Made by a program: the position numbers and the translations under genes. Of a stretch of 64,000 nt of DNA, positions 490-64,000 are shown piece after piece. Each line of letters opens with the position of its first letter. Position 1 is the stretch's first letter. The stretch comes from Vitrella brassicaformis CCMP3155 (lineage: Eukaryota; Protista; Chromerida), in the NCBI GenBank assembly GCA_001179505.1, contig CDMY01000377.1, positions 1 to 64,000 on the forward strand. Direction: 5' to 3'. The notes under the pieces were generated by a model, which saw only the letters and a program-made list of their open reading frames with translations, was not told the origin of the DNA and did no database searches.

Positions 490-1010
490 GCCATCCCTAT
501 GCTGACGGCTACAAGCGGACCGACCCCGTCATCCTCTGGGGCTTATGGCTCTTCCGCTCATTCTCGGCATTCCTGCTGGCCACGCTGCTCTCCCAATGGT
601 GGGATGGACAAGGGGTGGATAACAAGGCGGTCCTCACTGCAAATATCGGCCGTGGTGACCACCCTCGCTGTGACCGTCTGCTGACAGATGACATCACAGA
701 CGATTTGGGCATCGCTGTCGACTATCGCTACGATGGGGACAATCTCAACAATGCTGCTGATGCAATTGACTGTCGTTATGTCTTTGTGAGCGGCTGGCGA
801 GCCGAGGAAAGCGTGGCTGCTTATCTGCATGTGGCTTGGCATGTGGGTTTGGGGTACGGTTACATCAATCTGTGGACAACCGAGGCACCTGCTGCTGATC
901 GGCCTGCATCACTCGCTGTCCGCTTCCCCATTTCGGAGCCCCTGTGACGCCGTGTGCTGCGGCGGTACAATCTGGAGAGTGACGTCATCGACAGGGGGAC
1001 GGTGGTGGGT
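490..1010 (+). pseudogene. Family A pseudogene, 5'-truncated, with premature stop
   Basis: Frame from 498 reads YADGYKRTDPVILWG...SFSAFLLATLL...DDITDDLGI...RFPISEPL*, matching the intact copy at 53157-54194. TGA at 945-947 replaces the W of EPLWRRLL, and homologous codons (RRVLRRYNLESDVIDRG) continue after it. Confidence 0.85.
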
Positions 1011-1865
1011 TTGGTCCTGACTGCCGAGTAGGTGGTGTTGCTGTATGCTGGCCGGGCGGCAGTGTGTGAGGAGTGGAGGGGGGCGAAGTAGAGCCCGTCA
1101 AGAGGTACATAAAATCTGTTTGAAGGGACTCAGGGGTGAGTGTGAGTGTGTGTGTGTGTGTGCGTGTTGAAAGACTACTTCCACACATCCATGTGTGTGT
1201 CTGTGTGGTAGACCCTCCCTTCTGCCTTGGTTTGAATTTTCCTGTTCAAGCCGACCGCAAACCCACCAAGTCACATTGTTCACACCAACAGCCAATTCCT
1301 GTCCGCAGCTCTGTCCCCTCCACTGGCAAACCACAACACATACTCCTTCTCTCGCACACAGTGTGACCCCCCCCTCCCCCCCTCCCCGCCCCCCACTCAC
1401 TGTGCGGATACAAGACCCAAAAATGCAAACACAATACTTTTGAAACTGGAGCTTCTGTCGAAGTAAGTCCAACAAAGTGTCTTGTCTGTCTCACGAACGA
1501 GTGTGAGTATGTGTGTTGGAGAAGGTGGGCTCTGGCGGTCTCTGGGTTTTGTGTGGAGCGGTCAGCGAAGGATTTTATAAGTTGATAGCATGTGCATGTG
1601 TTTGACTTCCAAATGGACTGACTCATGGCCTGGCTGCAGAGATGTGCGTGTTTCATTCGCGGCCATGAACGAGTACGAGCACTTAATTTTGCGCCTTTCC
1701 AATCCCTTCTGTCTCTATGCGATGGCCACACACAACCAGCCCTCATTCTTGATAAAAGAAGGTACGTAAAAACATCACTCCGTGAGTAGACAACCATGCA
1801 CTCACGCCAGTCACGAGCATCACACTCTTGGCCTATCTGGTTGGCCAATGGCCATCTGCCTTTGC

Positions 1866-3042
1866 CTATATGACAAGGCATCCACCCTCACTCTCCATCC
1901 GCCACACCTTGCCCCCCAGCTGCCGCCCTAGCACTCTCATCACGGCATTGCGCGTCCTATCGTGGGGGGCAGACTCCGTCGTGTACACATCGACAGTCTG
2001 AGAACGGTCAGCTCCCCAATCCGCCAGTCGAATGACCGCCGTGTGCCCCTCACTGACCGCCTCACTGCCCAACACACCAGCCGCAAATGCCATCGACAAT
2101 TATACTTCTGGTCGAACACGGCCACTCCGTTCCCCCACTGTGCCGCATCGCTGGGAGGGGCCGCCCGCAGCTGACACACACGTAGAGATGCCGCAGAAGC
2201 CGGACACCAAGACGACCAGTCTCTGGAGAAAGTGATGTAGCGGCCGTCACGAAGCCAATTAAAGACGCTGAATGCCACCAAAGAAGCGTAATTGCGGTAC
2301 GTCCAGCCGTCCAGCTGTGTGGGCGGGTTGGCGGGGTCGACTGTGTCACGAGGGAAGAGGGGGCTGGCAGAGGTGAGGAGGGCGGGGAGACGGTAGCCCG
2401 AGGCAGTGTGGAGGATCCAGTCGCCGTCCATCAGCTGTCTTTGCTGGCCTCTATCATGGACAGTCACCCCTCGGCTGAGTATCTTCCACTGGCGGACCGC
2501 CTCGGTCTCGCCGATGAAGCCCCGGCCCGTCTGGCTGCCGAACACCTCGAAATGCCCATCACCCAGCACCACTGGCCGCTTGCCGCGTAGGTGATACAGC
2601 AGCTCCAAATGAGGCCGCCACCTCGCCAAGTCGCGGCCATCCTCGAGCATCATTAGCCGTCGTGTGATGGCCACAATGACGGCCGCGTCCTGGCTCAGCT
2701 TGGGGATGGCCACCTGCACGAAAGCACCAAATATGTCTTCCACCACGGCGGGCAGCAGTCGTGTGAGGATGGGCAGCAAGACGGCGGTTGTGAATTGTGT
2801 GGGATGGGCGTCGATGAGGGCCTCCAGCTGTGAGTAGCTCCTGACATACTCGGCGATGATGACCGCTGCCTCCTCAGGCACATCAGAGGCACTGATGGGG
2901 TCGTCATGCTGCTGAGGGGGGGAGGTGCTGCGGTGACAAGTAGCCAATGTCTGCAACACAAACCCGCCGACCAACAGGCATAGTGAATGAATGTTTACTG
3001 GCGCTCCCCTCTTTCTTCACCGTGAGTAAGGCCTTCAGCCAT
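1866..3042 (-). pseudogene. Family B gene, frameshifted
   Basis: Homologous to 60599-61840 (MAEGL.HGE, VPEEAAVIIAEYV, RWRPHLELLY, EAVRQWKILSRG, YTTESAPHDRTRN). A 1-bp deletion near 2072 turns WHLRLVVLGS into WHLRLVCWA. There is a 5' frame disruption with TAA at about 2995-2997. Confidence 0.8.
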
Positions 3043-3824
3043 CGCCACGGGTTTAACATGTCGACGTCCTGATCGGGTCACAACCGCCTGTGAGTCGCAG
3101 GTCTGCCACACACGCACACGCGCGCGCACACAGAGAGAGAAAGATCACATTTCCCTGTCATCCTCCATGCCCTCGGTCCTTCTTGTCCTCCCTTCTCACC
3201 TAACAATACGCCCAGATCAGCTGCAGCCAGAGCGATGATGCCGACATCTGTGCCGATTGATATCATCACAGCGCGTCTTTGTGTATATGTCACACAGACC
3301 CAACACCGCCCTGTTGTACCGGAGAGAAGAAAGGGGGGAGATCTGCACGCCACAAGCTCACAGACCGATCGGCGGTGGCCTTTGGAGCATTTGGAGCCTT
3401 TGCAGCTCACTGGAGGGTGAGATGGCAGCCAGAGAGGCAGAAGAATCCAAAAGAAGCTTCAAATAGCGGCTGCTGCTTCGTTTTTGGTGGCCGGCCTGCA
3501 GACCTCACCCGTCCCGCCTCAGTGCCGGGAGGTGACGACGTCCGCACAGCGAACTCATTTCATCGCTTTGTCTGCGCTTCTGTGACGGCCTCGTCGTCGC
3601 ACGGCTCTCGTGACTGACTGACATCGGTGAGGCTGTGCGGTGATCATGGCGCTGCGTGCGTGCGCCCCAGATGTGTGTGCTGCTGTGTGTCTGCAGAGTC
3701 ACCGCGGTTCGTGACGATTGCTGCCATCTCGCCCAGCTTTGACGGTGAGCATCCTGCCGTCCAATTCACTCGGTCTGATTCCCATGTGTGTGTCCCTCTT
3801 CATCCAGACCACTCCCTGGTGGCG
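3043..3824. promoter_or_regulatory. Divergent spacer (putative bidirectional promoter plus 5' UTRs) between B(-) and A(+)
   Basis: 3043-3425 aligns with 61841-62230 and 63249-63650, including a near-invariant 73-nt block at about 3215-3290. It contains a probable 5'-UTR intron of B (gtgaga...tggcag on - strand, about 3104-3199). Confidence 0.6.
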
Positions 3825-4904
3825 ATGTCGTCCCGGCCTGCCAACGGCCGGCCCCCCACCGCCCCTCGGGCAGTCCCCCCGCTGCGCAGCGCGGCCATCA
3901 GCAAGGCCGCCGACATGGCCATGTCCGTTGACCCCAACAGACGCGCCGCACTCCACTCACAAATCAATGGCAGCAATGCCGGCGAAGTGGCCGGGATCCT
4001 ATTGCTCGTCGAGCAGCACATTGGCAAGGCCATCAGTCGTCTCGGCCTGGCGGACGTGTTGGCCTTCGACAGTGGCGGTGATGTGGAGGCCGGCTTGAAG
4101 GTGGTCTATGTGCTGGAGCGGGGCAGTGGCGAGGAGTGGCGGGCAATCGGGCGGTTCCTTCGGCTGGCCTTCATCTACCGGCTCACCCCTGCTAATACGA
4201 CGCGGCCCCTCCGTCTGTCGGCCGACTCGCTGCCCACAGCCGCGGCCTTCTACCAGCTGCCACTGACCATTGCCCTCTACAAGATCATCGGACAGCAGCT
4301 CAGAAACAGGGTGACCAGCCTGGTGCTGCAGCAAGCCGAGGACGGACACTATCGAATCGGCGGCATGGCGCCGTTTCGTGTAGTGCCGTTGGGCGAGCTG
4401 CGCGGCGACCATCGCTATACTGAGGGCTACAAGCGGAGCGACCCCGTCATCCGCTCGGGCCCTGATTTGTATTCCTCATTCTCGGCATTCCTGCTGGACA
4501 GGCTGCTCACCTGGTGGCGCTATGTAGAGGGAGTGGACGTGAAATGTGTGGGGTCTGCACGACGCGGCGGTGACGACGGTCGTTATCGCCGTCTGCATAC
4601 GGCCGACGACATCACAGAGGATTTGGGCATCGTTGTGGACCGGCGCTTCGATGGGGGCGATCTGAATGCTGATGTGGGAGACTACCGCTGTGTGATTGTG
4701 AGCGGCTTCCGGCCAAACGATACCGTCGCTGCCCATCTGATGGGGTCGGGCTCCATCAACCTGTGGACGACCGACGCACCTACTGCTGATCGGCCTGCAT
4801 CACTCGCTATGCGCTTCCCCACTTCGGAGCCCCTGTGGCGCCGTCTGCTGCAGCGGTTCAATCCCGAGACCGACGTCATCGACAGGGGGAGGGTGGTGGG
4901 GTGA
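3825..4904 (+). CDS. Family A protein (subtype A2, different N-terminus), 359 aa, intronless CDS
   Basis: Open ORF with ATG at 3825. Core motifs YVLERGSGEEW, RLAFIYRL, YKRSDPVI, DDITEDLGI and EPLWRRLLQRF...DVIDRGRVVG are shared with the other A copies. Confidence 0.8.
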   Translation: MSSRPANGRPPTAPRAVPPLRSAAISKAADMAMSVDPNRRAALHSQINGSNAGEVAGILLLVEQHIGKAISRLGLADVLAFDSGGDVEAGLKVVYVLERGSGEEWRAIGRFLRLAFIYRLTPANTTRPLRLSADSLPTAAAFYQLPLTIALYKIIGQQLRNRVTSLVLQQAEDGHYRIGGMAPFRVVPLGELRGDHRYTEGYKRSDPVIRSGPDLYSSFSAFLLDRLLTWWRYVEGVDVKCVGSARRGGDDGRYRRLHTADDITEDLGIVVDRRFDGGDLNADVGDYRCVIVSGFRPNDTVAAHLMGSGSINLWTTDAPTADRPASLAMRFPTSEPLWRRLLQRFNPETDVIDRGRVVG

Positions 4905-5340
4905 GGGGTGTTGCCATATCCTGGCCGGGCAGTGTGTGAGTTTTGGAGGGGGGCGGAGTGGCTTTAAATGGCTGACGTGACTGAGAATGAGTGGATGAAG
5001 GTCGAGCTCGAGAGTTACGTCATCGACAGGAAGACGGTAATTGGGTGAGGGGTGCTGACTGGCGAGTGGGTGTTGTGATGCTCTATGAAATGGGCGTCGT
5101 GCCTGGTCGAGTGCCTGCTATGGGTCAGCGAGTGTTTATGGCTCGTTTTTGTGCAGACAGACGACCTTCGACTAGTCTCATCGACTCAATGCATCGGAAG
5201 CAAACCAGTGTGAGTAGTGGAGAATGAGTGGATGAAGGGCCCTCTTGCTTTGTTGTCAGACGCAGTGACTGCGTGGCATCGCTTTTGTCAATGACTGAGT
5301 GGCTTGACCAAAGTCGCTTCGTTCCACCAGCCATACCATG
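4905..5340 (+). repeat. Conserved 3' flank of family A, including a second copy of the A C-terminal end (about 5004-5130)
   Basis: gagctcgagagttacgtcatcgacagg...ctctatgaaatgggcgtcgtgcctggtcgagtgc matches 46528-46633. The 5220-5340 segment matches 9420-9520 and 54290-54390. Confidence 0.8.
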
Positions 5341-5705: not shown

Positions 5706-6260
5706 GCAATACAAGCGACTTGCGCTCCAAAGCTGGCCCTGTGGTCCGAAGGCTGGCATGTCTGCCCATGGGGCCAGCCCTGCAGGTAGATGTCCAGCCC
5801 TGTAGTCACAAGGCCAGCCATGCACTCACAAGGCCAGCCATGCACTCACAAGGCCAGCCCTACAACCACAGGGCCAGCCCTACAACCGTAGGGCCAGCCC
5901 TGCAGCCACAGGGCCAGCCTTGTACTCACAGGGCTAGCCCTGCAGTGAGTCAAAACCCTCCAGAAGCACTTAACTCGTCACGCAGAGGCCAGCCATGTGT
6001 CTGCAAGGCTAGCCCTGTGAGTGCAAGGCTGGCCCTGTGGCTGCAAGGCTGGCCCTGTGGCTGCAGGGCTGGCCCTACGGTTGTAGGGCTGGCCCTGTGG
6101 TTGTAGGGCTGGCCCTGTGAGTACAGGGCCGGCCCTGTGACTACAGGGCTGGCCTTGTGACTACAGGGCTGGACATCTACCCGCAGGGCTGGCCCCATGG
6201 GCAGACATGCCAGCCTTCGGACCACAGGGCCAGCTTTGGAGCGCAAGTCGCTTGTATTGC
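5706..6260. mobile_element. Non-autonomous foldback/MITE-like element, 555 bp, long TIRs made of 20-bp subrepeats
   Basis: Ends GCAATACAAGCGACTTGCGCTCCAAAGCTGG... and ...CCAGCTTTGGAGCGCAAGTCGCTTGTATTGC are exact reverse complements. Arms pair over about 240 bp around a short spacer (about 5946-5984). No coding capacity. Confidence 0.85.
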
Positions 6261-35254: not shown

Positions 35255-36302
35255 ATCATGTGCAGGCGACAGACGCCCGGGCAATGACAGTACGTGAACG
35301 ATGGATGACTGACGGCCGTTGTTGGATGTTTGTTGTTGCTGTCATCATGCTGCAGGGTGGGTGGCTGCGGTGCTGTCGGTTCGGCGGCTCGATCAGTTGT
35401 CGTTTTTTGACAAGAGGGGCGGAGTGTCATGTGGGTTCACACATACATGTAAAGGTACATGCGTGGATATGCATGACAGGGCGTGGCTGTTTATGCGTGT
35501 GTGTACCCGGATGATTCATCGTAAGTAAGTAGGTTTAAGGTCGTCATGTGAGTTGGTTCTCCATACGTATCCATCGCATTTTTGCCCCTCTCTAGGCATT
35601 CCATTTGCCTCCTTCCTGGTCGACCATCCATCACTATGGGGTTCGTGTGGACGGTCAGCATCTGCATGAGCGTCATTCCACTCGTGTGTATACTGTCTTC
35701 GTACCCGATATGAGTGTATATATACACCGTGTCAATTGCATACCTTCGTTCCTATCTGTTCGTGCATGCCTCGGTGTGGCTGAGTCCGGCTGGCTGGCTG
35801 ACGGTGTGTCTGTCTGTCTGCATTTGTTGGATGCGTGTGCTCTGTCTGGGGGTCCCGGCGGCCTTACAGTGTGCTGACTGGTGCGTTGCTGCCGGCATGT
35901 GCCAATGATGTATGTGTGAGCTGTGTGTATGTGCCTGACGGGATCAGACAGCCAAACAGCCAAGTCCATGTGTTCGTTTGTGTTGTGCCTGCCCATGGCT
36001 GTGAGATACCCTTTTGGCGTCGTTGCAGTGCTCCATGCTTCCCCAGTGCAGCTGAATACGAACTCTTGGCGTCGTTTCGACGTGCGGTGAAAAGATCCAG
36101 TGTCGGTTCGATGTGCCTTCCATAGGCTCCTCCCACTTGGTGGAGGGGATCTGCCCGAAATCCCGATCAAAGCGCGAGCAGCTGCGAGCCTGGCCGCGGC
36201 CCGTGTCGATCCCTCGAAAAAAAAGAAATCTGCCTTTGCAAACAGGTTCTGCGAAGGTTAACGTGAGGACCCATTCTTATTGCTCTCCAATCGTTGCTCT
36301 CA

Positions 36303-42600: not shown

Positions 42601-43207
42601 GGACGGCTGTGGCTGTGCATGGACCGACCTCTGGACTTCGAGGGAGGAAGCCGACTTGAGGATGAGGGAGTCGCGAGATGCGGCCGTGTGCTGCTTCTGG
42701 CCCTCCAGTTGCCCATCCACCACCATTTCACTCCCAGCAGCGGCTGCACCGGCAGGCGCGGGACGGCCGTAGGCTATGACCTGCTGCTGATTGTGGTCGG
42801 CTAGAGGGTCTGCAGATGTGTCGGCTACTCGTCGTTCATTATCATCATCAGGGCGGTCCTCAGCACGGGTGGTCTGCATTCATGGAAACGTATGAGCAGG
42901 GAATGCATATGATGTCGATGCATTCTGGCGTAGGATCTTCGTCAGACCTCTGCTGATGTGGCTGTGCATGCACCGACATCTGGACTTCGAAAGAGCCAGC
43001 CATGTTTCTATCATTAAGGGTGGTCTGCATTCATGGAAACGTATGAGCAGGGAATGCATATGATGTCGATGCATTCTGGCGTGGGATCTTCCTTACGGTC
43101 GTGTTGAGGGAGATTTCACTCCCGTGCTGGAAGTGATACCGTGTCAGTGCCAGCGCGCCGAACAGCACAGCCAGCACTGCCACGGTATGAAAAGCGCCCG
43201 TCGGCAT
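39677..43207 (-). pseudogene. Inverted, internally duplicated and partly frameshifted paralogue(s) of family C
   Basis: MPTGAFHTVAVLAVLF exon at 43207 and 42471, homologous to 36303. Repeated exon1-intron-exon2 modules. Duplicated TM+DMKAKDK exons at 41368-41700 and 40557-40760, the latter with a frameshifting deletion. Confidence 0.55.
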
Positions 43208-43696
43208 TCGCGCGAGGGTGAATGCTGTCAGCAACGGACGAATCGTTCCACCACGACAAAACGAGGAAGATGAGCCCTCCCACGGCGGGCGGCATGCCGA
43301 TGACGCGAGGGGAAAATGAAGTCGCCTGTGGCTTGAAGAATCCGAACAGGACCGAAATTGAAATTTTGCCGTCTCCCAGTCTCAACAATTGAATTCTCGC
43401 CACAATTCAATTTTTGATGGTTTGCCGCATTGCAGAGGCTTTGAACGGACCATTCGCAGACATAACCAAAAGCAAAACACGCATCTCTTTTGCTGGTGTT
43501 GGTGTGTGCCTTTCATTGTCTTTGGTAACCCGCGACTACATCTTCTGTGTTGTCAAAGTGACGCCATTCATTGTGCGAGTCATGTCCACAACGTCAAATT
43601 GAATCGGCTTCAGACAGTTTGCGACAGACAGCCAAAAAGCGAAGGGACGTCTACGTCTCGGGGTGGTTCGTTACTGCCCGCCACTGCCCGATTGGA

Positions 43697-45520: not shown

Positions 45521-46570
45521 ATGTCTGATTCGGTGCCCGACGACCTGTGGCGCCGGCGCATTCTGCCGTCCCTTCTCGTCCATGAGGCGGTCTGTGTCCG
45601 AGCGAGCTGCCGGGCGAAGGCGACTAGGTGACGGCTGCTCTGCTGGTGGAGCGCATCGACGGCTCCCTGGCCCGCCACTCACTCACCGGCCTCATCGACA
45701 TCGACCGCACCGCCCCTCTCCCATTCACCTATGTGCTGCGGGCGGTGTGCTGGAGCAGGGCAGCGACGAGTGGCCTGGGATGGGGCGGTTCATCCGGCTG
45801 GCCGCCATCTATCGGCTGACCCCTGCCAATGGGCTGCCCCTGGTGCTGTCGGCTCAGTGGCTGACAGTCCACCTGCCCAGCAGGACGGCATTCCATCAGC
45901 TGCCATTGGCCATGGCCATCTATCGGCTGTTCGGCCACCTCCTTACACACAATGGACACAGCCTGGCGCTGCAGCGAACGGCCGGCAACGGATACTATCG
46001 CATCGGCAATCAGTCGTTCCGTGTAGTGGCGTTGGGTGAGCTGTGGGGCGGCCATGGCTATGCCGACGGCTATCAGAGGACCGACCCCGTCATCCGCTGG
46101 GGCGGTAACCTCTACCCCTCATTCTCGACATTCCTGCTGCACAGTCTGCTCTCCCAATGGTGGGATGGAGAGGGGGTGGGTCAGAAGTCCGTGCTCACTG
46201 CACAGATCGGCCAGCCGGGTGCAGTCATCGGCCGTGGTGACCCTCGCTTTGACCGTCTGCTGAGGACCGACGACATCACAGAGGATCAGGGCATCGCTGT
46301 CGACTACCGCTGTGATGGGGCCATCTGAATGTTGATGCGACTAATTACCGTCGTGTGATTGTGAGCGGCGTCCGCCAGGGCGAGACCGTGGCTGCATATC
46401 TGTGGATGGGGTATGGCCGCATCGTGCTGCGGACGACCGAGGCACCTGCTGCCGATCGGTCTCAGCCACTCGCTCAGCGCTTTCCGGAGTCCATGCCCGT
46501 ATGGCGCCGTCTGCTGCGGCACTTCGAGCTCGAGACCGACGTCATCGACAGGGGGAGGGTAATAGGGTGA
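45521..46570 (+). pseudogene. Family A pseudogene, full length, at least 3 frameshifts
   Basis: MSDSVPDDLWRRRILPSL start. Frame breaks near 45628, 45745 and 46320 relative to 53157-54194. Ends ...ETDVIDRGRVIG* at 46570. Confidence 0.85.
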
Positions 46571-47035
46571 GTGGTGCTGGATCGATGGGTGTCGTGATGC
46601 TCTATGAAACGGGCGTCGTGCCTGGTCGAGTGCGACGCAACACCGATCGATCGATCCAACATTCGTACACACGGCACAGACGTATATCCAATGAGAGACA
46701 GACATGCATCGTATCTGTCACTGTCTGTCGATTGGCTCTTCGATCCGTCAATCGACCGACTGACACGACACACCAGTGAGTCTGTGGATTGTGGATGAGT
46801 CTCTGTATTGAGCGAAGGGGCCAATACATGTATTGGGCAAGAGTGGGCAAGAGTGGGCAACTATGGGCAAAACTTTGGCTGACTTCATGCATGATACGAT
46901 TGCTTTTGTCAAGACTCGCTGACTGCGTGGCTTCGTTCACCAAATGAATGAATGGATGGTTGAACGATGCATGTCTCAAAGCGCTGCACAAATTGCCACA
47001 CAGCTCTTATTGGTGCAACACACTTGTCTTCTCAC

Positions 47036-52877: not shown

Positions 52878-53156
52878 CTTCTTGCGAGCTCAAAAAGAAG
52901 GACCTGACGAGGCAGTCTTCAAACAGTGCAGTTGTTATCGTTTGCCTCTGTTCGTTGCAGGTGGCCCGCTGATCTATGCTGACTATTCATCTCATCCTCA
53001 CCGTCACGAGCGTTCCCTCCCTGCAGGGCCGGTAGCTACTGCGGCGCCGTCAAGGATATGGACCACTCACTGTCCACATCGCCGCCTGAGCTCTGCCACT
53101 GCACCAACTGCCGCAAGGCGATGGTGACCAATGACATCTCGCTTTCACGGTGATTG

Positions 53157-54194
53157 ATGGCGTCTTCGGTGCCCGACGACCTGTGGCGAGGCCGGGTGGT
53201 GAGGTGCCTGCAGCTGCCTGATGTGATATCTCTCCGCAAAACCTCCCGCGCCATCGGCACGTCCATCATCACGGCCGCTCTGCTGGTGGAGCGCATCGAC
53301 GGCTCCCTCGCCCGCCACTCCCTCACCGGCCTCATCGACATCGACCGCACTGCCCCTCTCCCATTCAGCTATGTGCTGCGGGCGGCCTATGTGCTGGAGC
53401 AGGGCAGCGACGAGTGGCCTGGGATGGGGCGGTTCATCCGGCTGGCCGCCATCTATCGGCTGACCCCTGCCAATGGGCTGCCCCTGGTGCTATCGGCTCA
53501 GTGGCTGACAGCCAACCTGCCCAGCAGGACGGCATTCCACCAGCTGCCATTGGCGATGGCGATCTATCGGCTGTTCGGCCACCTGCTCACACACAACGGA
53601 CACAGCCTGGCGCTGCAGCAGGCCGACAATGGGAGCTATAGGATCAGCAATGAGTCGTTTCGTGTGGTGCCGTTGGGTGAGCTGTGGGGCGGCCATGGCT
53701 ATGCTGAGGGCTACAAGCGGGCCGACCCTATCATCCGACACGGCATATGGATCTTCCGCTCATTCTCGGCATTCCTGCTGGCCACGCTGCTCTGCTGGCG
53801 GTGCAATGGAGAGGGAGTGGGTCAGAAGTTGGTGCTCTCTGCACAGTTCGGCCATGGTGACCCTCGCTTTGGCCGTCTGCTGAGGACCGACGACATCAGT
53901 GAGGATTTGGGCATCGTCGCCGACTTTCGCTACGATGGGGGGGATCTGAACCATGCTGATGCGGAAGAGAGGCGTTTTGTGGTAGTCAGAGGCTTCCGCC
54001 AGGGCGAGACCGTCGCTGCCTTCCTCTGGATTGGGTATGGCAGCATCGTGCTGCGGACGACCGAGCCATCCGCTGCGGATGCACCTGCATCACTCGCCCA
54101 CCGCTTCCCAATTTCGGAGCCCCTGTGGCGCCGTCTGCTGCAGCGATTCGGTCTGGAAACCGACGTCATGGACAGGGGTATAGTGGTGGGGTGA
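53157..54194 (+). CDS. Family A protein, intact, 345 aa, intronless CDS, F-box-like N-terminus
   Basis: Open ORF MASSVPDDLWRGRVVRCLQLPDVISLRKTSR...ETDVMDRGIVVG*. Confidence 0.85.
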   Translation: MASSVPDDLWRGRVVRCLQLPDVISLRKTSRAIGTSIITAALLVERIDGSLARHSLTGLIDIDRTAPLPFSYVLRAAYVLEQGSDEWPGMGRFIRLAAIYRLTPANGLPLVLSAQWLTANLPSRTAFHQLPLAMAIYRLFGHLLTHNGHSLALQQADNGSYRISNESFRVVPLGELWGGHGYAEGYKRADPIIRHGIWIFRSFSAFLLATLLCWRCNGEGVGQKLVLSAQFGHGDPRFGRLLRTDDISEDLGIVADFRYDGGDLNHADAEERRFVVVRGFRQGETVAAFLWIGYGSIVLRTTEPSAADAPASLAHRFPISEPLWRRLLQRFGLETDVMDRGIVVG

Positions 54195-55076: not shown

Positions 55077-58000
55077 TCACAGCTCGATCTCCTCCGCCCA
55101 CATCTTGCCCCCGAGGTGCTCCCCCAAATTATCCATCACGACACGGCGCGTCTTGTCGTAGGGGGCCGCCTCGGTCGTGCAGATGTCAACATCGCGTCGA
55201 CTCCCCCAATCCTCCACCCGAATCACCGCCATGTGCCCCTCGCCCATCACCTCACTCCCCACCACCACCAGCCGATCATGGCGCACCGCCGCCCCGTCAG
55301 GCCGCTCCTTGTCGAAGACGGCCACGCCCCGTGGCCACCCCCCGACCTGTGCAACATCGCTGGCAGAGATCGCCAGCAGCTGACACACATGCTGAAATGC
55401 AGCAAAGGAAGGGCGGCAAGACCTCCAGGATTTGATCCAACGGATGTGCTCGCCGTAACGAAGCCAGTAGAACAGCTCGAAGGCCACCATACAGGCGTAG
55501 GTGGGATACGTCACGAAGGCCTCCATCTGTGTGGGCGGGCTGGCGGGGTCGAATGCATTGGGGAAGAGGGGGCTTGGGGAGGCCAGGAGGGTCGGCCTGG
55601 AACGGCCAGTGGGGGGGCAAAGAATGCCGTCGTGGTCCATCAGCAGTCTCTGTCGGCCTAGATCATCAGCGACAGTGATCCCCCGGCTGAGGATCTTCCA
55701 CTGGCGGACCGCCTCGGTCCGGCCGACGAAGGCCGCCCGGCTGCCGAACGCGTCGAAATGCTCATCGCCCAACACCACTGGCCTCCTTCCCCTCAGGATG
55801 TAGAGCATCTCCAAGTGAGGTCGCCATCTCCGCCAGTTGCCGCCCCTCTCGAGCATGAACAGCCGACGGGTGAGCTGTTGGATGAGGTAGGCGATGCAGC
55901 AGCCGTGGCTGAGTGCGGCAGGGAGCGGCAGCTGGGGGATGATGCACACCAGAAATGAGCCGAATCCAAGAGTCGGCAGCAGCACGCCCAATACACGCAG
56001 AAGGAGGGGCAGGAGTATGGGGGCGATGTCGTTGCGAAGGGCCTTATCAAAGCGGCTGAGGGCGATCATTCCAGCGTAGCTGCTGCTGCTGAGGCACTGG
56101 GCGATGGTCGGCATCACTTCACGGGGCACGGCAGAGAAGGGCACGCCCTCTTGCCTATCGCCTGTTATGACCGCTACATCACAAACAATGTCATTCAGCA
56201 CGTGTATGTGCCTTTGTGATTGTGTCCTTCTGCACTGGAGCTGTTGGTTACCATCGGCAGCAGACGCGGCAGACGAGGATGGCTCGCTACTAGACGCGCC
56301 AGCTCCATCAGCAGCAGCAGCCGACATCTGCGGACCCGCAACAGACCTAACACGGACACTCCGCGACTGCTCGAGCTGGTCACTGCACACGAGAGGGAGA
56401 AAGGGGGAGACAGAGTGGAGGTGTGGTGTGTTGGCTGTGGGTGTCGGGGGTGTGGTATGACCTCTCCGACAACTGATGGGGATAGTACTCGCTCTCGGAA
56501 CGCATCTGACCAGCCATGCCACACCCCACACACATGCACCCATCCATCGTCTGCCTTTCCCCTCTCCCCCCCGCCCCCGCGTGCCACTGACACTGACCTG
56601 GCCCTCCTCGTAATCCTCGTCCTCGTAAAGGGGCGGGGGCGGCTGGGTGGGCCGCTCCGGCAACAACACACCCACACCCGAGCTAACGCTACCCTTTCCC
56701 CCACCCTCTCCGTCCCCCTCCTCCTCTATGCCCTCCTCTCCCTCACCCACACCCACATCGGGCTTGGCCCCCTTCTCGCCCCGCATAAAATTGCCCATGT
56801 GCTCCCGCAGCTCAGGTGAGATGCCCGCCGAGCGCGTCTTGCCCTTCTGGTGCTGTTTCTTCTTGATCCGAATGTCGCGCGTGGCCTCGCCCTTGAGGAC
56901 CGCCTGTGTGCTGCTGTCCTGGTTGATCTGGAGGGCGTTTATCTCCTGCCGGATGGTGCTGTGGGCGCGGGGGATGCGCGCGAAGCCGCCCTGGGGCGGC
57001 TTGCTGGGGCCGCCCGTGGTGGTGGTGCCGCCCCCGTTCTGCTGCTGCTGCTGTTGGTGGGCGACAAGGTTGCTGAGGGGCGTGACGAGGCCGCCGTTGG
57101 TCATGTTGGTGTCGTCCTGCTCGCCGCCCTCCTCAGGAATGATGGCGCCGACGTTTGGCGTCGGGTAGAATGTCGCGCCCCGGCTGTCATAGGGGGCCTG
57201 GAGGTCGGGCTCGGAACTGTTGGTGTAGATGACCCCCGCGGCCGGCAGCACGTGGTGCTGGTCCCTGACCATCACCGGCGGGCGCTGGGGGTACGGAGCG
57301 GGCGGCAGGTAGCTCCGGTCCGGCAGAATCCCACCATCCATACCCATCCCGCCATCTACTCCCCTGCCCATGTTGCCCGGCATCGCTATCCCTCCGCCCC
57401 CTTGTTTCTTCTGCAGTTGCTGCGGCATCATGGCCGGGAGCGTCCCACGGCCGGTCACCTGCTGGTGCTGATGCATGAGCTGCTGGTACTGGTGCTGCGG
57501 TGGCCGCACCTGATGGCCGCCTCCGCCCCCTCCCCCAACCCACGGCGGCATGAAGGGCACTGGGGTGGTCTCGCCCTGCCCCTGTGTGCCCGGCCCGCTG
57601 CCGAACCCGAGGCCCCTCTTCATGGCCAGCCACGGCGGCTGGAAGAACCCCCTTTGCTGCTGCTGCTGCTGCTGTTGGGGGTGGAAGGGCTTCTGCTTGG
57701 GTCTGAAGTCGTAGGATGCGTGTGCCTCCGGGAGGTTTGCGGGCCCCTGTGGGGTGGCTGCGGTGTTGGTGTACTGGATGATGTTGGGCGGGAGCGTCGA
57801 GTGGGAGCCTGTGGCGGTAAGCTGCGGCCGGGGCGGCGGGCCGGTCCTGGTGGGCTGTGGCGTGCGAGAGGGAGCGGGCATCGTGAGGTTCTGAGCAGAG
57901 CGCGGCGCCATGCCCGACAGATCTTGCGACTGAGAATACGCACCACCTGCACAGACCAACACAACACCGCAACACACAGGGAAAGAAAGATGTACTCCCG

Positions 58001-58445: not shown

Positions 58446-59526
58446 CTCTCGAAGAAACGGTTTTACAAGCCTTCGAGGGGGGCGGCAACTGGGCCAGATG
58501 GAAGCCTCACCTGGAGATGCTGTACTTGCTGAGGGGCAATAGGCCTGTGGTGCTGGGTGACGACAACTTCGGCGTGTTTGGCAGCCGGCGGCCTTCATCG
58601 GCGAGGCAGAGGCGGTGCGGCAGTGGAAGATACTCAGCTGGGGGGTCATTGTCAGTTTTCGAAACCAGCTACAGCTGATGAACGGCAACACCATCCTTCG
58701 CTTTCACATTTGCCCTTACACCCCCACCCTCTTTGCCAGCCCCGTCTTCCCTCACGTACCATTCGACCCCACCAACCCGCCCACTAAGCTGAGCGGCTTG
58801 ACGTACCCCAACTACACATCAATGGTGGCATTCGTCTTGTTCGGCTGGCTCTATTACGACAGCGACTTCCCTTGCATCAGGTCCTGGGTGTCTTGGCGTC
58901 GTGCCTCTGCTGCACGCCGGCGTGTCGTTGCAGTGCTGGCGGCCTCTCCCAGCGATGAGGCACAGTGGGGGGCGGGGGCGGCCGTGTTCGACAAGCGGCT
59001 CCCGGACGTGNNNNNNNNNNNNNNNNNNNNNNNNNNNNNNNNNNNNNNNNNNNNNNNNNNNNNNNNNNNNNNNNNNNNNNNNNNNNNNNNNNNNNNNNNN
59101 NNNNNNNNNNNNNNNNNNNNNNNNNNNNNNNNNNNNNNNNNNNNNNNNNNNNNNNNNNNNNNNNNNNNNNNNNNNNNNNNNNNNNNNNNNNNNNNNNNNN
59201 NNNNNNNNNNNNNNNNNNNNNNNNNNNNNNNNNNNNNNNNNNNNNNNNNNNNNNNNNNNNNNNNNNNNNNNNNNNNNNNNNNNNNNNNNNNNNNNNNNNN
59301 NNNNNNNNNNAGTGAGGCGGTGGGAAAGGGACGCCTGGCACTTATTTGGCTGAGCGATCACAAATTTCCCTCTGATGTGTCCGTCTACACGACCGAGTGG
59401 TTCCCCCACGACAAGACGCGCAATGCCGTGATGAGAATGCTTGGGGATCAGCTGGGGGGAAAGATGTGGCGGAAGGAGGATGAGGTGAACGAGGACAGGC
59501 AAGTCACGGCCTGCACTGTGATGTGA
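58446..59526 (+). pseudogene. Family B copy, 5'-truncated, 1-bp deletion near 58588, spans an N gap
   Basis: FEGGGNWARWKPHLEMLYLLRGNRPVVLGDD, then a frame change to EAVRQWKILSWG...YTTEWFPHDKTRNAVMRMLGDQLGGKMW. Confidence 0.75.
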
Positions 59527-60598: not shown

Positions 60599-61840
60599 CT
60601 ACATGATAACGCATCCATACTCGCTCTCCTCCCGCCACACCTTGTCCCCCAGCTGCCGCCCTAGTACTCTCATCACGGCATTGCGCGTGCGGTCGTGGGG
60701 GGCAGACTCCGTCGTGTACACATTGACACGACGTTCATCTCCCCAATCCGCCAGCTGAATCCCAGCCGTGTGCCCCTCACCGACCGCCTCACTGCCCAAC
60801 ACCACCAGCCGCAAATGCCATCGATCCTTATACTTTTTGTCGAACACGGCCATACCCTTCCCCCACTGTGCCGCATCGCTGGGAGGGGCCGCCAGCAATT
60901 GATACACTCGCCGGAATGCAGCAGAAGCAGGACACCGAGACGACCAGTCTCTGGAGAAGGTGAGGTAGCCGCCGTCACTAAGCCAATTAAAGACGCTGAA
61001 CGCCACCATAGAAGCGTAAGTGCGGTAGACCCAGCGCACACACAGACCGTCCAGCTGTGTGGGCGGGTCGGCATGGTTCAGCTGTGTGGGCGGGTCGGCA
61101 GGGTTGAATGTGTCGTGAGGGAAGAGGGGGCTGGGTGCGTCGAGGAGGGTGGGGGGGCGCCAGCGATGAAGGCCATAGCCCCAGCCATAGCCCCAGCCAT
61201 GAAGCCATTGCTGGCCTCTACGGTGGAGAGTCAGCCCCCGGCTGAGTATCTTCCATTGGCGGACCGCCTCGGTCTCGCCGATGAAGCCCCGGCCCGTCTG
61301 GCTGCCGAACACCTCGAAATGCTCATCGCCCAGCACCACTGGCCACTTGCCGCATATGTGATAGAGCAGCTCCAAATGAGGCCGCCACCTCGAGAAATCG
61401 CGGCCATACTCCAGCATCATTAGCCGTCGTGTGATGGCCACAACAACGGCCGCGTCCTGGCTCAGCTGAGGGNNNNNNNNNNNNNNNNNNNNNNNNNNNN
61501 NNNNNNNNNNNNNNNNNNNNNNNNNNNNNNNNNNNNNNNNNNNNNNNNNNNNNNNNNNNNNNNNNNNNNNNNNNNNNNNNNNNNNNNNNNNNNNNNNNNN
61601 NNNNNNNNNNNNNNNNNNNNNNNNNNNNNNNNNNNNNNNNNNNNNNNNNNNNNNNNNNNNNNNNNNNNNNNNNNNNNNNNNNNNNNNNNNNNNNNNNNNN
61701 NNNNNNNNNNNNNNNNNNNNNNNNNNNNNNNNNNNNNNNNNNNNNNNNNNNNNNNNNNNNNNNNNNNNNNNNGGCATCACCAATGTATGCATGCTGGCGC
61801 TTTCGTCGCTCGGCTCACCGTGAATAAGGCCTTCAGCCAT
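60599..61840 (-). CDS. Family B protein (middle part in N gap)
   Basis: MAEGLIHGEPSDES..., frame preserved across the 300-N gap, ...RWRPHLELLY...WHLRLVVLGSEAVGEG...YGCVIM*. Confidence 0.75.
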   Translation of the reverse strand: MAEGLIHGEPSDESASMHTLVMXXXXXXXXXXXXXXXXXXXXXXXXXXXXXXXXXXXXXXXXXXXXXXXXXXXXXXXXXXXXXXXXXXXXXXXXXXXXXXXXXXXXXXXXXXXXXXXXXXXXXPQLSQDAAVVVAITRRLMMLEYGRDFSRWRPHLELLYHICGKWPVVLGDEHFEVFGSQTGRGFIGETEAVRQWKILSRGLTLHRRGQQWLHGWGYGWGYGLHRWRPPTLLDAPSPLFPHDTFNPADPPTQLNHADPPTQLDGLCVRWVYRTYASMVAFSVFNWLSDGGYLTFSRDWSSRCPASAAFRRVYQLLAAPPSDAAQWGKGMAVFDKKYKDRWHLRLVVLGSEAVGEGHTAGIQLADWGDERRVNVYTTESAPHDRTRNAVMRVLGRQLGDKVWREESEYGCVIM

Positions 61841-61912
61841 CGCCACGGGTTTAACATGCCGACGTCTTGATCGGGTCAGAACCGCCTGTGAGTCGCAGTT
61901 CTGCCACACACG

Positions 61913-61948
<36 letters not shown>

Positions 61949-62270
61949 TCACATTTCCCTGTCATCCTCCATGCCCTCGGTCCTTCTTGTTCTCCCTTTG
62001 CACCTCAATACGTCCAGATCACTGCAGCCAGAGCGATGATGCCGACATCTGTGCCGATTGATATCATCACAGCGCGTCTTTGTGTATGTCACACAGACCC
62101 ACCATCGCCATGTTGCACCGGAGAAGAGGGGGGGAAAAGGGCTGAAGGGGAAGAATTGGGCCAAGCTCGCAGGCCGATCCGGGCGAGCATGCCTTGGTCC
62201 GCATTTGCAACTCATGGAGGGTGAGATGAGTGTAGTTCGCTTTCACGTGCTGACTGAGTCGTGGTGATTG
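61841..62270. promoter_or_regulatory. Divergent B/A spacer, copy 2
   Basis: Homologous to 3043-3425 and about 99% identical by eye to 63249-63688. Confidence 0.65.
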
Positions 62271-62605
62271 ATGGCGTCTTCGTTGCCCGACGAGCTGTGG
62301 CGAGGCCGGGTGGTGAGGTGCCTGCAGCTGCCTGATGTGATATTTCTCCGCAAAACCTCCCGCGCCATCGGCACGTCCATTATCACGGCCGCTCTGCTAG
62401 TGGAGCGCATCGACGGCTCCCTCGCCCGCCACTCACTCACCGGCCTCATCGACATCGACCGCACTGCCCCTCTCCCATTCAGCTACGTGCTGCGGGCGGC
62501 CTATGTGCTGGAGCAGGGCAACGACGAGTGGCCTGGGATGGGGCGGCTCATCCGGCTGGCCGCCATCTATCGGCTGACACCTGTCAATGGGCTGCCCCTG
62601 GTGCT
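62271..62605 (+). CDS. Family A, 5' part (truncated by gap)
   Basis: MASSLPDELWRGRVVRCLQLPDVIFLRKTSR, nearly identical to 53157. Confidence 0.75.
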
Positions 62606-62905: not shown

Positions 62906-63248
62906 TCCACCACGCTGCCGAAGCTGCCTTCCACGACAACGGGCAGCAGTCGTGTGAGGATGGGCAGCAGGATGCAGGGTTGAACTGTGTGGGGTGGGCG
63001 TCGATGAGGGCCTCCAGCTGCGAATAGCTCTTGACGTACTCGGCGATGATGACCGCTGCCTCCTCAGGCACATTAGCGGCACTGACGGCTGGTTCCACCA
63101 TAGAAGGGACACTAGCTGATGCCTCAGAGCTGGCGCCTCCGTCACGCGCAGCCAATGTCTGCAACCCCCGCCGACCGACAGGCATCACGAATGTATGCAT
63201 GCTGGCGCTTTCGTCGCTCGGCTCACCGTGAATAAGGCCTTCAGCCAT
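62906..63248 (-). CDS. Family B, 5' part (truncated by gap; apparent frameshift near 62985)
   Basis: MAEGLIHGEPSDES...VPEEAAVIIAEYVKSYSQLEALIDAHPTQF. Confidence 0.65.
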
Positions 63249-63688
63249 CGCCACGGGTTTAACATGCCGACGTCTTGATCGGGTCAGAACCGCCTGTGAG
63301 TCGCAGTTCTGCCACACACGCACACACACACACACACACACACAAAGAGAGAGAGAGAGAGAGAGATCACATTTCCCTGTCATCCTCCATGCCCTCGGTC
63401 CTTCTTGTTCTCCCTTTGCACCTCAATACGTCCAGATCACTGCAGCCAGAGCGATGATGCCGACATCTGTGCCGATTGATATCATCACAGCGCGTCTTTG
63501 TGTATGTCACACAGACCCACCATCGCCATGTTGCACCGGAGAAGAGGGGGGGGAAAGGGCTGAAGGGGAAGAATTGCGCCAAGCTCGCAGGCCGATCCGG
63601 GCGAGCATGCCTTGGTCCGCATTTGCAACTCATGGAGGGTGAGATGAGTGTAGTTCGCTTTCACGTGCTGACTGAGTCGTGGTGATTG
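63249..63688. promoter_or_regulatory. Divergent B/A spacer, copy 3
   Basis: Near-identical to 61841-62270. Confidence 0.65.
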
Positions 63689-64000
63689 ATGGCGTCTTCG
63701 TTGCCCGACGAGCTGTGGCGAGGCCGGGTGGTGAGGTGCCTGCAGCTGCCTGATGTGATATTTCTCCGCAAAACCTCCCGCGCCATCGGCACGTCCATTA
63801 TCACGGCCGCTCTGCTAGTGGAGCGCATCGACGGCTCCCTCGCCCGCCACTCACTCACCGGCCTCATCGACATCGACCGCACTGCCCCTCTCCCATTCAG
63901 CTACGTGCTGCGGGCGGCCTATGTGCTGGAGCAGGGCAACGACGAGTGGCCTGTGATGGGGCGGCTCATCCGGCTGGCCGCCATCCATCGGCTGACACCT
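63689..64000 (+). CDS. Family A, 5' part (runs off window)
   Basis: ATG at 63689, MASSLPDELWRGRVVR. Confidence 0.75.
   Translation, partial: MASSLPDELWRGRVVRCLQLPDVIFLRKTSRAIGTSIITAALLVERIDGSLARHSLTGLIDIDRTAPLPFSYVLRAAYVLEQGNDEWPVMGRLIRLAAIHRLTP

What the first reader, a model, noticed from the sequence alone, without database searches (positions are those of the whole stretch)
1866..4904. Recurrent head-to-head B<-->A two-gene cassette (1866-4904, 60599-62605, 62906-64000)
Seen: family B (-) and family A (+) start either side of a conserved spacer of about 0.4 kb. The spacer at 3043-3425 aligns with 61841-62230 about 59 kb away, and includes a 73-nt block with only one indel. Each gene also carries its own conserved 3' flank, and solo A and B copies lie at 0.5, 45.5, 53.2, 55.1 and 58.4 kb. 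Inference: the pair is copied as a unit and co-expressed from a bidirectional promoter. That layout would fit a paired system (toxin/antidote, sensor/executor, or heterodimeric SCF adaptors) or the cargo of an unrecognised mobile element. No function is visible in the sequence.
Basis: partly seen in the sequence, partly recalled or inferred. Interest (0 to 1): 0.8.

Follow-up and report, generated by a model that had tools for sequence, protein, structure and literature searches.

The report
Back-to-back F-box-like gene pairs
In the coral-associated alga Vitrella brassicaformis, two distantly related branches of one alga-only family of probable protein-disposal adaptors (F-box proteins) sit back to back and are copied as a pair; this is a new, expressed example of a known kind of expanding gene family, not a toxin system or a mobile element.

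Summary
The window is Vitrella brassicaformis CCMP3155, contig C377. Family B (- strand) and family A (+ strand) lie head-to-head at 1866-4904 and again near 60.6-64 kb. From the genome-wide hit tables I counted at least 21 such divergent pairs on 9 contigs, 8 convergent A/B neighbours and none on the same strand.

A and B are not unrelated partners. They are deeply diverged paralogues of one Vitrella-only superfamily (hhalign E 2.9e-6). This superfamily has at least 136 clusters at 50% identity.

The A head folds like an F-box. It docks on Vitrella's own Skp1 in silico (score 0.79, best control 0.02). About a third of B proteins end in a prenylation (CaaX) box.

The "spacer" is not an empty promoter. 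RNA contigs show spliced transcripts running both ways, and the first exons meet or overlap on the conserved block (3215-3330). A diverged form of this core, about 200 bp long, aligns in nine older pairs, so the pair is an inherited unit. Partners can still be swapped (cassettes 2 and 3), and B copy 1 carries a frameshift.

Cassettes 2 and 3 are cut by two 300-N gaps and may be a single locus. I found no support for a toxin/antidote pair or a mobile element.

This scan has already met this kind of Vitrella F-box-like family on other DNA (s1-201670, s1-246545).

The parts
1866..2950 (-). Family B copy 1, main coding exon. It ends in a CaaX-like C-L-V-I. A 1-bp deletion near 2076 shifts the frame before the most conserved C-terminal motifs.
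   Evidence: ORFs; split protein match; alignment with two other copies; RNA and DNA contigs with no gaps over the site
2951..3020 (-). Intron of B (GT..AG on the - strand)
   Evidence: Joint 2950|3021 in RNA runs X1, X2 and X7, absent from DNA run X3; agrees with the public gene model P0073
3021..3102 (-). B exon holding the start codon (3059-3057) and 13 codons (M-L-N-P-W-R-W-L...), an N-terminus shared by several B proteins
3103..3199 (-). 5' intron of B containing the (CA)n(GA)n microsatellites. The donor is AG|GTGAGA and the acceptor is pyrimidine-rich then CAG.
   Evidence: X2 contig 2807-2950|3021-3102|3200-3377 with 0 mismatches; intron ends read from the sequence; donor conserved in 9 pairs
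3200..3377 (-). Non-coding 5' exon of B. The contig extent is 3200-3377; at least the first 31 nt upstream of the junction must belong to the - strand RNA. It lies antisense to A exon 1.
   Evidence: record 9
3215..3330 (.). Conserved core block, 91-95% identical in 6 copies. A diverged form is alignable in 9 older pairs. No Rfam match and no convincing RNA fold.
3221..3625 (+). A copy 1, exon 1 (5' untranslated; the annotated donor at 3274 is not used in the RNA contigs)
   Evidence: X7 contig 3221-3625|3696-3743|3807-4000. It carries 5 mismatches, so it may come from the 96%-identical twin on C683.
3626..3806 (+). Two GT..AG introns of A (3626-3695 and 3744-3806) around the small exon 3696-3743
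   Evidence: Joints in X1, X2 and X7, not in X3
3807..4904 (+). A copy 1, main coding exon. The likely start codon is at 3825 and the stop at 4902-4904. This is the long-type N-terminus, a degenerate F-box-like head.
5220..5336 (+). 117-bp element that recurs downstream of A copies (also at 54274-54392 and, off the window, at C377:64832 and 94658)
60599..61927 (-). B of cassette 2, ending G-C-V-I-M, interrupted by a 300-N gap at 61473-61772
62017..62124 (.). Core block of cassette 2
62271..62605 (+). A of cassette 2 (F-box-type head, M-A-S-S-L-P-D-E-L-W...), cut by the gap at 62606-62905; 97% identical to the solo A at 53149
62906..63335 (-). B of cassette 3, N-terminal part only (it starts at the gap)
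63435..63542 (.). Core block of cassette 3
63689..64000 (+). A of cassette 3 (protein P0055), running off the window to C377:64720
492..1010 (+). A fragment (C-terminal third, one stop inside) at the contig start, convergent with B copy 1
45582..46600 (+). Solo A copy
53154..54194 (+). Solo A copy (protein P0036; F-box-type head). This is the protein that was modelled and docked on Skp1.
55083..55892 (-). B-type domain at the end of a 1043-aa open frame, convergent with the A at 53.2 kb
58463..59487 (+). Solo B copy, in pieces

Best explanation
The cassette is a head-to-head pair of two anciently diverged paralogues (A and B) of one superfamily that is so far seen only in Vitrella brassicaformis. 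Members carry a worn F-box-like head and a shared alpha/beta C-terminal domain that has no clear solved relative. They most likely act as substrate receptors of SCF (Skp1-cullin-F-box) ubiquitin ligases. A sizeable branch of B also ends in a CaaX box, so those proteins would be lipid-anchored to membranes. The two genes are transcribed away from each other out of a core of about 200 bp in which their non-coding first exons meet or overlap. That core, together with both genes, has been passed on as one duplication unit by segmental (tandem and inverted) duplication. Later changes include partner swaps by recombination, decay of single members, and many solo copies. Shown: the arrangement, its recurrence, the A/B homology, transcription and splicing of both genes, and inheritance as a unit. 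Inferred: SCF function, prenylation, and any benefit of the shared core (co-regulation or dosage balance).
For: Organism and family size. A has at least 100 genomic matches out of 299 candidates, B has about 60 loci, there are 136 clusters at 50% identity, and every distant hit I looked up is from Vitrella. A/B homology: hhalign probability 88%, E 2.9e-6 over 264 columns. A bridging member, P0192, matches the A profile (E 2.5e-12) and the B profile (probability 95%, E 4.7e-8). The two C-terminal domains have the same order of secondary-structure elements and hit the same solved chains. F-box: residues 1-85 of the A model (pLDDT 88.9, pTM 0.88) align to the F-box plus linker of beta-TrCP1, Cdc4, FBXO31 and Fbs2 at Z 6.0-6.6, rmsd 3.0-3.6 A, over 69-80 residues. 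SLY1, FBXW8, Fbw7, FBXO42 and FBXO3 appear lower in the list. Docking on Vitrella Skp1 (P0233) scored 0.79 against a best control of 0.02; this mark was reached by 51 of 78 solved complexes and 2 of 108 mismatched pairs. The runs agree in at least 92% of contacts, the partner pLDDT is at least 62, and the interface joins Skp1 101-160 to A 3-33. The language-model neighbours are all F-box clusters. Distant members give sub-threshold Pfam F-box-like hits at the right position. Other members carry a BTB head or a ubiquitin tail instead. Skp1, cullins and prenyltransferase genes are present in the genome. CaaX: 11 of 32 aligned B proteins and all three readable B C-termini end in C-x-x-M/L/I. Transcription: spliced joints on both strands appear in three RNA runs and not in the DNA run. 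Unit inheritance. Orientation tally by hand: 21 divergent, 8 convergent, 0 same-strand.
Against: No Pfam F-box model reaches threshold on any A or B protein of the window. The F-box fold matches have Z below 8, a range where chance similarity between helical arrangements occurs. The docking pass may reflect the model's memory of solved Skp1-F-box complexes, and it was run on the F-box-type A (P0036), not on the long-type A of 3627-4904 or on B. The N-terminus of the B model is poorly predicted (pLDDT below 50 for residues 1-71), and its F-box hits are weak (Z 4.1-4.3). The overlap of the two first exons rests mainly on one 404-nt contig, and contigs carry no strand information beyond their splice sites. 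The pair counts are lower bounds made by hand, and the copies are not independent events. Head-to-head spacing under 1 kb is reported as enriched genome-wide in Vitrella (PMC4501334), so the orientation alone is not special.
Confidence: 0.65

Rival explanations
1. The two products work together as an obligate pair. For example, a membrane-anchored B and a soluble A could form a heterodimeric SCF receptor, or a sensor/executor couple like paired plant NLR genes. The shared core would then exist to keep their dosage matched.
For: The B<->A arrangement is kept through many duplications, and the core is conserved more than expected for a spacer. Both genes are expressed in the same runs. Some F-box proteins are known from general knowledge to dimerise (S. 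pombe Pop1/Pop2; beta-TrCP1/2).
Against: Many A and B copies are solo. A<->A head-to-head pairs occur. Partners are swapped in cassettes 2 and 3. In the flagged cassette B is frameshifted while A is intact.
Confidence: 0.15
2. The pairing has no function. It is a by-product of one old inverted duplication followed by segmental duplications, in a genome that favours close head-to-head genes anyway.
For: A and B are paralogues. The clusters are dense, with alternating strands. Head-to-head enrichment is reported genome-wide. Other head-to-head cassettes were noted elsewhere in this genome.
Against: The core block is 91-95% identical between copies whose flanks and coding DNA are only 71-87% identical or no longer alignable. 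A splice donor inside the core is kept in nine pairs. There are no same-strand A/B neighbours among 29 adjacencies.
Confidence: 0.15
3. The pair is the cargo of an unrecognised mobile element.
For: There are many dispersed copies on many contigs, and the unit ends are sharp and recurrent (about 1616 and about 4985).
Against: No transposase, integrase or reverse transcriptase signature is found in A, B or the neighbouring ORFs. No terminal inverted or long terminal repeats bracket the unit. The unit ends coincide with the likely ends of the two 3' UTRs. Most copies sit in local clusters, as expected from segmental duplication.
Confidence: 0.03
4. The pair is a toxin/antidote (selfish) gene pair.
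For: Only the tight linkage of two genes supports this.
Against: The two proteins are homologous to each other. No toxin-like domain is found. One partner is broken while the other is intact and expressed. There are dozens of copies per genome.
Confidence: 0.02

Closest known systems
Lineage-specific F-box gene expansions (for example the C. elegans F-box/FTH families and the Arabidopsis FBA/FBK families; from general knowledge)
   Same: There are a hundred or more species-restricted paralogues in clusters. They have a short, degenerate F-box head and a variable C-terminal domain. Evolution is by birth and death, with broken copies.
   Different: The C-terminal domain has no significant match in the PDB or the ESM Atlas. 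The family is split into two deep branches that are usually arranged head-to-head around a conserved core. The organism is a chromerid alga, whose parasite relative Toxoplasma has only a small set of F-box proteins (PMC11570480).
Prenylated F-box proteins FBXL2/FBXL20 of mammals (from general knowledge)
   Same: They combine an F-box protein with a C-terminal CaaX box, implying a membrane-anchored SCF receptor.
   Different: The substrate domain is different (leucine-rich repeats in FBXL2). Here the box mostly ends in M, which is the farnesyl type. It is present in about a third of B proteins. Lipidation was not tested.
Head-to-head paired plant NLR genes (RPS4/RRS1, RGA4/RGA5; from general knowledge)
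   Same: Two paralogous genes are read divergently from a short shared region and duplicated as a pair within fast-evolving clusters.
   Different: There is no NB-ARC/STAND domain. No evidence shows that the products interact. Partners are exchangeable and often solo.
Close head-to-head gene pairs of chromerid genomes (Woo et al. 2015, PMC4501334)
   Same: Divergent genes less than 1 kb apart are reported as enriched in Vitrella.
   Different: Here the two genes are paralogues, their first exons meet or overlap, and the whole unit recurs at least 21 times.
Earlier scan reports on other pieces of this genome (s1-201670, s1-246545)
   Same: They describe Vitrella-only families with a worn F-box head and an undescribed domain, about 150 members, reshuffled between copies, many of them broken.
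   Different: As far as their summaries show, those reports do not describe the A/B split, the head-to-head unit, the overlapping first exons, the CaaX tail or the Skp1 docking. I did not check by sequence whether it is the same family.

Membership tests
F-box proteins (SCF substrate receptors) | F-box motif recognised by a curated sequence profile (Pfam PF00646/PF12937 above the gathering score) | tested here: not met
   There are 0 Pfam families for the window's A and B proteins and for 72 aligned members. Only sub-threshold hits occur in distant members: P0192 E 0.0037 (residues 33-62) and P0210 E 0.025. UniRef names a few members 'F-box domain-containing'.
F-box proteins (SCF substrate receptors) | N-terminal three-helix F-box fold followed by linker helices | tested here: met
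   For A, model residues 1-85 match beta-TrCP1, Cdc4, FBXO31 and Fbs2 at Z 6.0-6.6, rmsd 3.0-3.6 A, over 69-80 residues, and five more F-box proteins appear lower in the list. Z below 8 is not decisive on its own. For B the result is inconclusive (FBXO42 Z 4.3, Elongin A Z 4.1).
F-box proteins (SCF substrate receptors) | Binds Skp1 through the F-box | tested here: met
   This was tested in silico only. Vitrella Skp1 (P0233) with P0036 residues 1-120 scored 0.79 against a best control of 0.02. The interface joins Skp1 101-160 to A 3-33 and 70-78. It may reflect likeness to solved complexes. The long-type A and B were not tested.
F-box proteins (SCF substrate receptors) | SCF core (Skp1, cullin) encoded in the same genome | tested here: met
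   Skp1 is found at C47 and C278, and cullin exons at C69, C224 and C603.
CaaX-prenylated proteins (family B only) | C-terminal Cys-aliphatic-aliphatic-X, with prenyltransferase present in the genome | tested here: met
   11 of 32 aligned B proteins end in C-x-x-M/L. The window copies end in CVIM and CLVI, and the C683 copy in CLAM. Prenyltransferase beta-subunit genes are present. Actual lipidation cannot be tested here.
Toxin/antidote gene pair | Two unrelated products, one harmful and one neutralising, kept together by selection | tested here: not met
   A and B are homologous. No toxin-like domain is found. B copy 1 is frameshifted while A copy 1 is intact. Toxicity itself cannot be tested here.
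Transposable element with cargo | Terminal repeats or target-site duplications, plus a transposase, integrase or reverse transcriptase | tested here: not met
   No bracketing inverted or direct terminal repeats are found. There are no such Pfam domains in A, B or ten neighbouring ORFs. The homology ends lie just past the two stop codons.
Paired NLR-type sensor/executor genes | NB-ARC/STAND ATPase domain in both partners | tested here: not met
   There is no Pfam match, and the fold searches show no P-loop ATPase.
Bidirectional (divergent) gene pair | Two genes on opposite strands whose transcripts start within 1 kb of each other | tested here: met
   A - strand spliced RNA reaches at least 3200-3230 (the contig runs to 3377). 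A + strand spliced RNA starts at or before 3221. Exact transcription starts were not mapped.

The most novel reading that the evidence does not exclude
The B/A unit is a two-part recognition device. A lipid-anchored B receptor and a soluble A receptor of the same private fold would act together on one SCF ligase. Their dosage would be tied by first exons that overlap in antisense, and the unit would diversify by duplication and partner swapping, like paired immune receptors. It could serve, for example, against viruses, or in self/non-self or symbiosis signalling in this coral-associated alga.
Probability: 0.1. Interest if true: 0.75.

Novelty: new variant of a known kind. Interest (0 to 1): 0.4.

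Why it matters
Chromerids are the free-living, photosynthetic relatives of malaria and Toxoplasma parasites. The parasites have few F-box proteins, whereas Vitrella has built a private repertoire of well over a hundred, with a domain of unknown fold class. That marks a large, fast-changing layer of protein-turnover control that no paper in the searched library describes. The conserved head-to-head unit offers a compact natural case for asking how divergent paralogues are co-regulated and duplicated together. If A and B cooperate, it would be a new kind of paired ubiquitin-ligase receptor. As it stands, it is a solid annotation gain rather than a surprise.

Tried and rejected
- Pfam on A, B and 72 relatives found nothing above threshold.
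- Rfam on 2900-3700 found no match.
- RNA folding of the core block on both strands, in two copies, gave z-scores of +0.4, -1.1, +0.3 and -2.1. This is not convincing evidence of a structured RNA.
- Foldseek of the A model against the PDB gave no match at E <= 0.001.
- The ESM Atlas shape search gave TM <= 0.30.
- The A profile against PDB sequences gave only noise (PsaD, E 0.6).
- The Atlas search for B gave no usable hit.
- The UniRef name 'TLDc domain' for one B protein is not supported. No TLDc chain appears among the fold matches. The only Pfam TLD hit is sub-threshold and lies in a separate part of the fusion protein P0230.
- The annotated A gene model (a start codon inside the core block at 3235 and a splice donor at 3274) is rejected in favour of the RNA contigs, which run unspliced from 3221 to 3625.
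- I planned gene trees and a formal co-phylogeny and orientation test, but the script machine was lost. Only identity rankings could be compared. These show co-descent for the two closest pairs and are uninformative for older ones.
Pairs on those contigs are known only from hit tables.
- The look-up of encoding contigs holds no record for this genome, so 'solo' B loci could not be checked for unscored A neighbours.
- The Skp1 gene is multi-exon.
Full report
WHAT THE WINDOW IS

The best protein matches of both ORF families are 'unnamed protein product' entries of Vitrella brassicaformis CCMP3155. The window is the first 64 kb of a 94.8-kb contig (C377) of a 72.7-Mb assembly. This is an intron-bearing eukaryotic alga, so six-frame ORFs are only a guide to its genes.

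CHECK OF THE OBSERVATION

- ORF listing and repeat finding show family B on the - strand (1866-2974; 60599-61927; 62906-63335). Family A lies on the + strand (3627-4904; from 62271; from 63689). In each case the two sit either side of a shared stretch.
- Window 3043-3425 finds 61841-62228 (82%), 63249-63646 (80%) and C377:81863-82252 on the other strand (85%). It also finds partial matches on contig C683.
- A block of about 105 nt (3215-3330) is 91-95% identical in six copies.
- Cassettes 2 and 3 are each cut by a scaffold gap of exactly 300 N (61473-61772 and 62606-62905). The 0.8 kb they share is 97-99% identical. The left part of cassette 3 is what would fill the first gap of cassette 2. 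They may therefore be one locus laid down twice. I could not settle this.

HOW OFTEN THE PAIR OCCURS

- A protein search of the whole genome gives at least 100 A matches (299 candidates, 99 scored) and 71-78 B matches, about 60 loci.
- I tallied adjacent A/B neighbours by hand from these tables. There are 21 divergent pairs with under 1.5 kb between the matched parts: five on C377, three on C240, four on C350, three on C683, two on C868, and one each on C894, C343, C509 and C649. There are 8 convergent neighbours and none on the same strand.
- By my own arithmetic, zero of 29 on the same strand has probability about 2e-9 if orientation were random. A count of 21 against 8 has a one-sided probability of about 0.012.
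- These counts are lower bounds. The copies are related to one another, so they are not independent events.
- A<->A head-to-head pairs also occur, for example C350:29730(-)/31444(+), which carries a diverged copy of the core block.
- The genome paper states that genes less than 1 kb apart are head-to-head more often than chance in Vitrella (PMC4501334). Other head-to-head cassettes have been noted elsewhere in this genome.

THE PAIR AS AN INHERITED UNIT

- Pair 1 aligns as one continuous 2.85-kb stretch (81% identity; window 2132-4985) with the inverted pair at C377:80260-83202. It aligns in two pieces with C683:1-2594.
- The homology ends recur at about 1616-1619 beyond the B stop and about 4985 beyond the A stop.
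- The closest relatives of A copy 1 (96% on C683, 74% at 80 kb) sit beside the closest full-length relatives of B copy 1 (71% and 72%).
- I aligned the regions between B and A of nine older pairs from seven contigs, whose proteins are only 52-65% identical. A core of about 200 bp still aligns. It includes a - strand splice donor (AG|GTGAGAG) and several short invariant runs. The core and its two genes therefore descend from one ancestral unit.
- The link is not strict. Cassettes 2 and 3 keep B and the core (B 74% identical, DNA about 81%) but carry another A subtype. That A is 53% identical to A copy 1 and 97% identical in DNA to the solo A at 53.2 kb. This points to a partner swap by recombination just right of the core.

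WHAT THE 'SPACER' REALLY IS

I laid the contigs of four public runs on 1700-5100. Three runs (X1, X2, X7) carry spliced forms, so they hold RNA. The fourth (X3) is colinear with the genome and serves as a DNA control.

- On the - strand there is an intron at 2951-3020. It matches the public B model, whose start codon I place at 3059.
- On the + strand there are introns at 3626-3695 and 3744-3806.
- One contig runs 3221-3625, then 3696-3743, then 3807-4000. A's first exon is therefore at least 3221-3625, and the annotated donor at 3274 is not used.
- This A contig carries 5 mismatches. It may come from the 96%-identical twin on C683.
- A 404-nt contig of X2 with no mismatch runs 2807-2950, then 3021-3102, then 3200-3377. 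The skipped 3103-3199 has CT..AC ends, that is GT..AG on the - strand, with a textbook donor and a pyrimidine-rich acceptor.
- B therefore has a further non-coding 5' exon that begins at 3200 and runs rightwards. The microsatellite-rich part of the 'spacer' is its intron.
- Strictly, only about 31 nt beyond the junction must belong to the - strand RNA. The rest of that contig could be shared with A's exon.
- Either way, the two transcription units meet or overlap on the conserved block. No untranscribed spacer is left between them.
- The block has no Rfam match and no convincing fold. Why it is more conserved than the coding DNA beside it remains unexplained. Possible causes are double use by both first exons, promoter elements, or gene conversion.

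WHAT THE PROTEINS ARE

- Pfam finds nothing in A or B.
- A profile-profile comparison shows that A and B are distant homologues (probability 88%, E 2.9e-6, 264 columns).
- The distant member P0192 matches both profiles.
- The AlphaFold model of A (P0036, the copy at 53.2 kb) is confident (pLDDT 88.9, pTM 0.88).
- The B model is confident only in its C-terminal half. That half has the same order of strands and helices as A and hits the same solved chains: adaptin appendage platform, a KICSTOR domain and YgiF.
- Neither model has a significant Foldseek match or Atlas match. The best description of the C-terminal domain is a TBP-like or platform-like alpha/beta domain of unassigned family.
- A profile search of 1.84 billion representative proteins finds 136 clusters. 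All ten distant ones I looked up are from Vitrella.
- Some members swap the head for a BTB domain, which is a cullin-3 adaptor head, or add ubiquitin. This fits a domain used as a target-binding module of cullin ligases.

EVIDENCE FOR AN F-BOX

- Residues 1-85 of the A model align to the F-box plus linker of beta-TrCP1, Cdc4, FBXO31 and Fbs2 at Z 6.0-6.6. Five more F-box proteins appear further down the list.
- Language-model neighbours of P0036 are all F-box clusters, with scores of 0.75-0.84. This is a lead only.
- Distant members give sub-threshold Pfam F-box-like hits at residues 28-71.
- I retrieved Vitrella's own Skp1 (P0233, 163 aa) from the protein database rather than joining its exons. 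Docked with P0036 residues 1-120, it scored 0.79 against a best control of 0.02. That mark was reached by 51 of 78 solved complexes and 2 of 108 mismatched pairs. The runs agree in at least 92% of contacts, and the partner's pLDDT is at least 62. The interface is the canonical one: Skp1 C-terminal helices against A residues 3-33.
- The pass may partly reflect the model's memory of solved Skp1-F-box complexes.
- The long-type head of the flagged A copy, and the B head, are assigned by alignment and motif only.
- Skp1, cullin and prenyltransferase genes are present in the genome.

OTHER FEATURES

- Eleven of 32 aligned B proteins end in a CaaX box, mostly C-x-x-M. So do the three readable B C-termini (CVIM, CLVI, CLAM). 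This predicts farnesylation and membrane anchoring, as in mammalian FBXL2 (from general knowledge).
- B copy 1 lacks one base near 2076 relative to two other copies. The deletion shifts the frame before the most conserved motifs. RNA and DNA contigs cover the site without a gap. The deletion therefore looks real, and the gene is still transcribed.
- Its partner, A copy 1, is intact. This is one case against strict co-dependence of the two genes.

REJECTED READINGS

- The unit has no terminal repeats and no transposase-like gene.
- A toxin/antidote pair is unlikely, because the two proteins are paralogues without any toxin-like domain.

COMPARISON AND VERDICT

- This is a lineage-specific F-box-like expansion, which is a known kind of family.
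- Its new features are an undescribed target-binding domain, two deep branches held head-to-head around a conserved core with abutting first exons, and a prenylated branch.
- I found no paper on it.
- The scan has reported Vitrella-only F-box-like families of this kind on other pieces of the genome (s1-201670, s1-246545).
- Whether A and B cooperate is open and was not tested.

Noticed in passing
window 61473-61772 and 62606-62905: Two scaffold gaps of exactly 300 N bracket an 833-bp piece. That piece is 97-99% identical to the stretch 1418 bp further on, so it may be a scaffolding duplicate rather than a true tandem repeat.
   Followed up: partly
window 5706-6260: A foldback made of 20-bp units (239-nt arms, 94% complementary) lies 0.8 kb downstream of A copy 1.
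   Followed up: no
window 36266-36553 versus 42275-43208, and 37571-37777 versus 42511-42720: Several inverted repeats of 80-250 nt at 92-96% identity, plus direct copies at 42275, 42860 and 43011. They suggest an unrelated repeated element, or a pair of inverted gene copies about 6 kb apart.
   Followed up: no
window 12268-13572 (-): An ORF with a 1,3-beta-glucan synthase domain (Pfam E 9e-17). The middle of the window holds ordinary genes, and the A/B clusters sit at its two ends.
   Followed up: no
window 55077-58208 (-): A 1043-aa open frame carries a B-type domain only at its C-terminal end. The rest lies in a 65% G+C stretch where long ORFs overlap in several frames, so the long N-terminal part may be spurious.
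   Followed up: no
window 5220-5336 and 54274-54392; C377:64832-64950 and 94658-94776: A 117-bp element (82-87% identical) recurs 0.1-0.3 kb downstream of A copies. It could be part of the 3' UTR or a small separate repeat.
   Followed up: partly
window 4499-4610: RNA contigs of three runs skip 110 nt with non-canonical ends (AG..GA) and only 26 nt on the short side. This probably comes from a paralogue with a deletion rather than from splicing.
   Followed up: no
proteins P0020, P0067, P0230, P0198, P0207 (other contigs): Some members of the superfamily carry other modules: a starch-binding CBM_25 domain, a BTB plus a weak TLDc hit, a C-terminal ubiquitin, or a cyclin C-terminal domain. This suggests that heads and tails are shuffled.
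   Followed up: partly
proteins P0076 and P0083 (family B, other contigs): Two B proteins begin M-G-x-x-x-T-K, which is a myristoylation-like start. This adds to the hint of membrane anchoring given by the CaaX tails.
   Followed up: no
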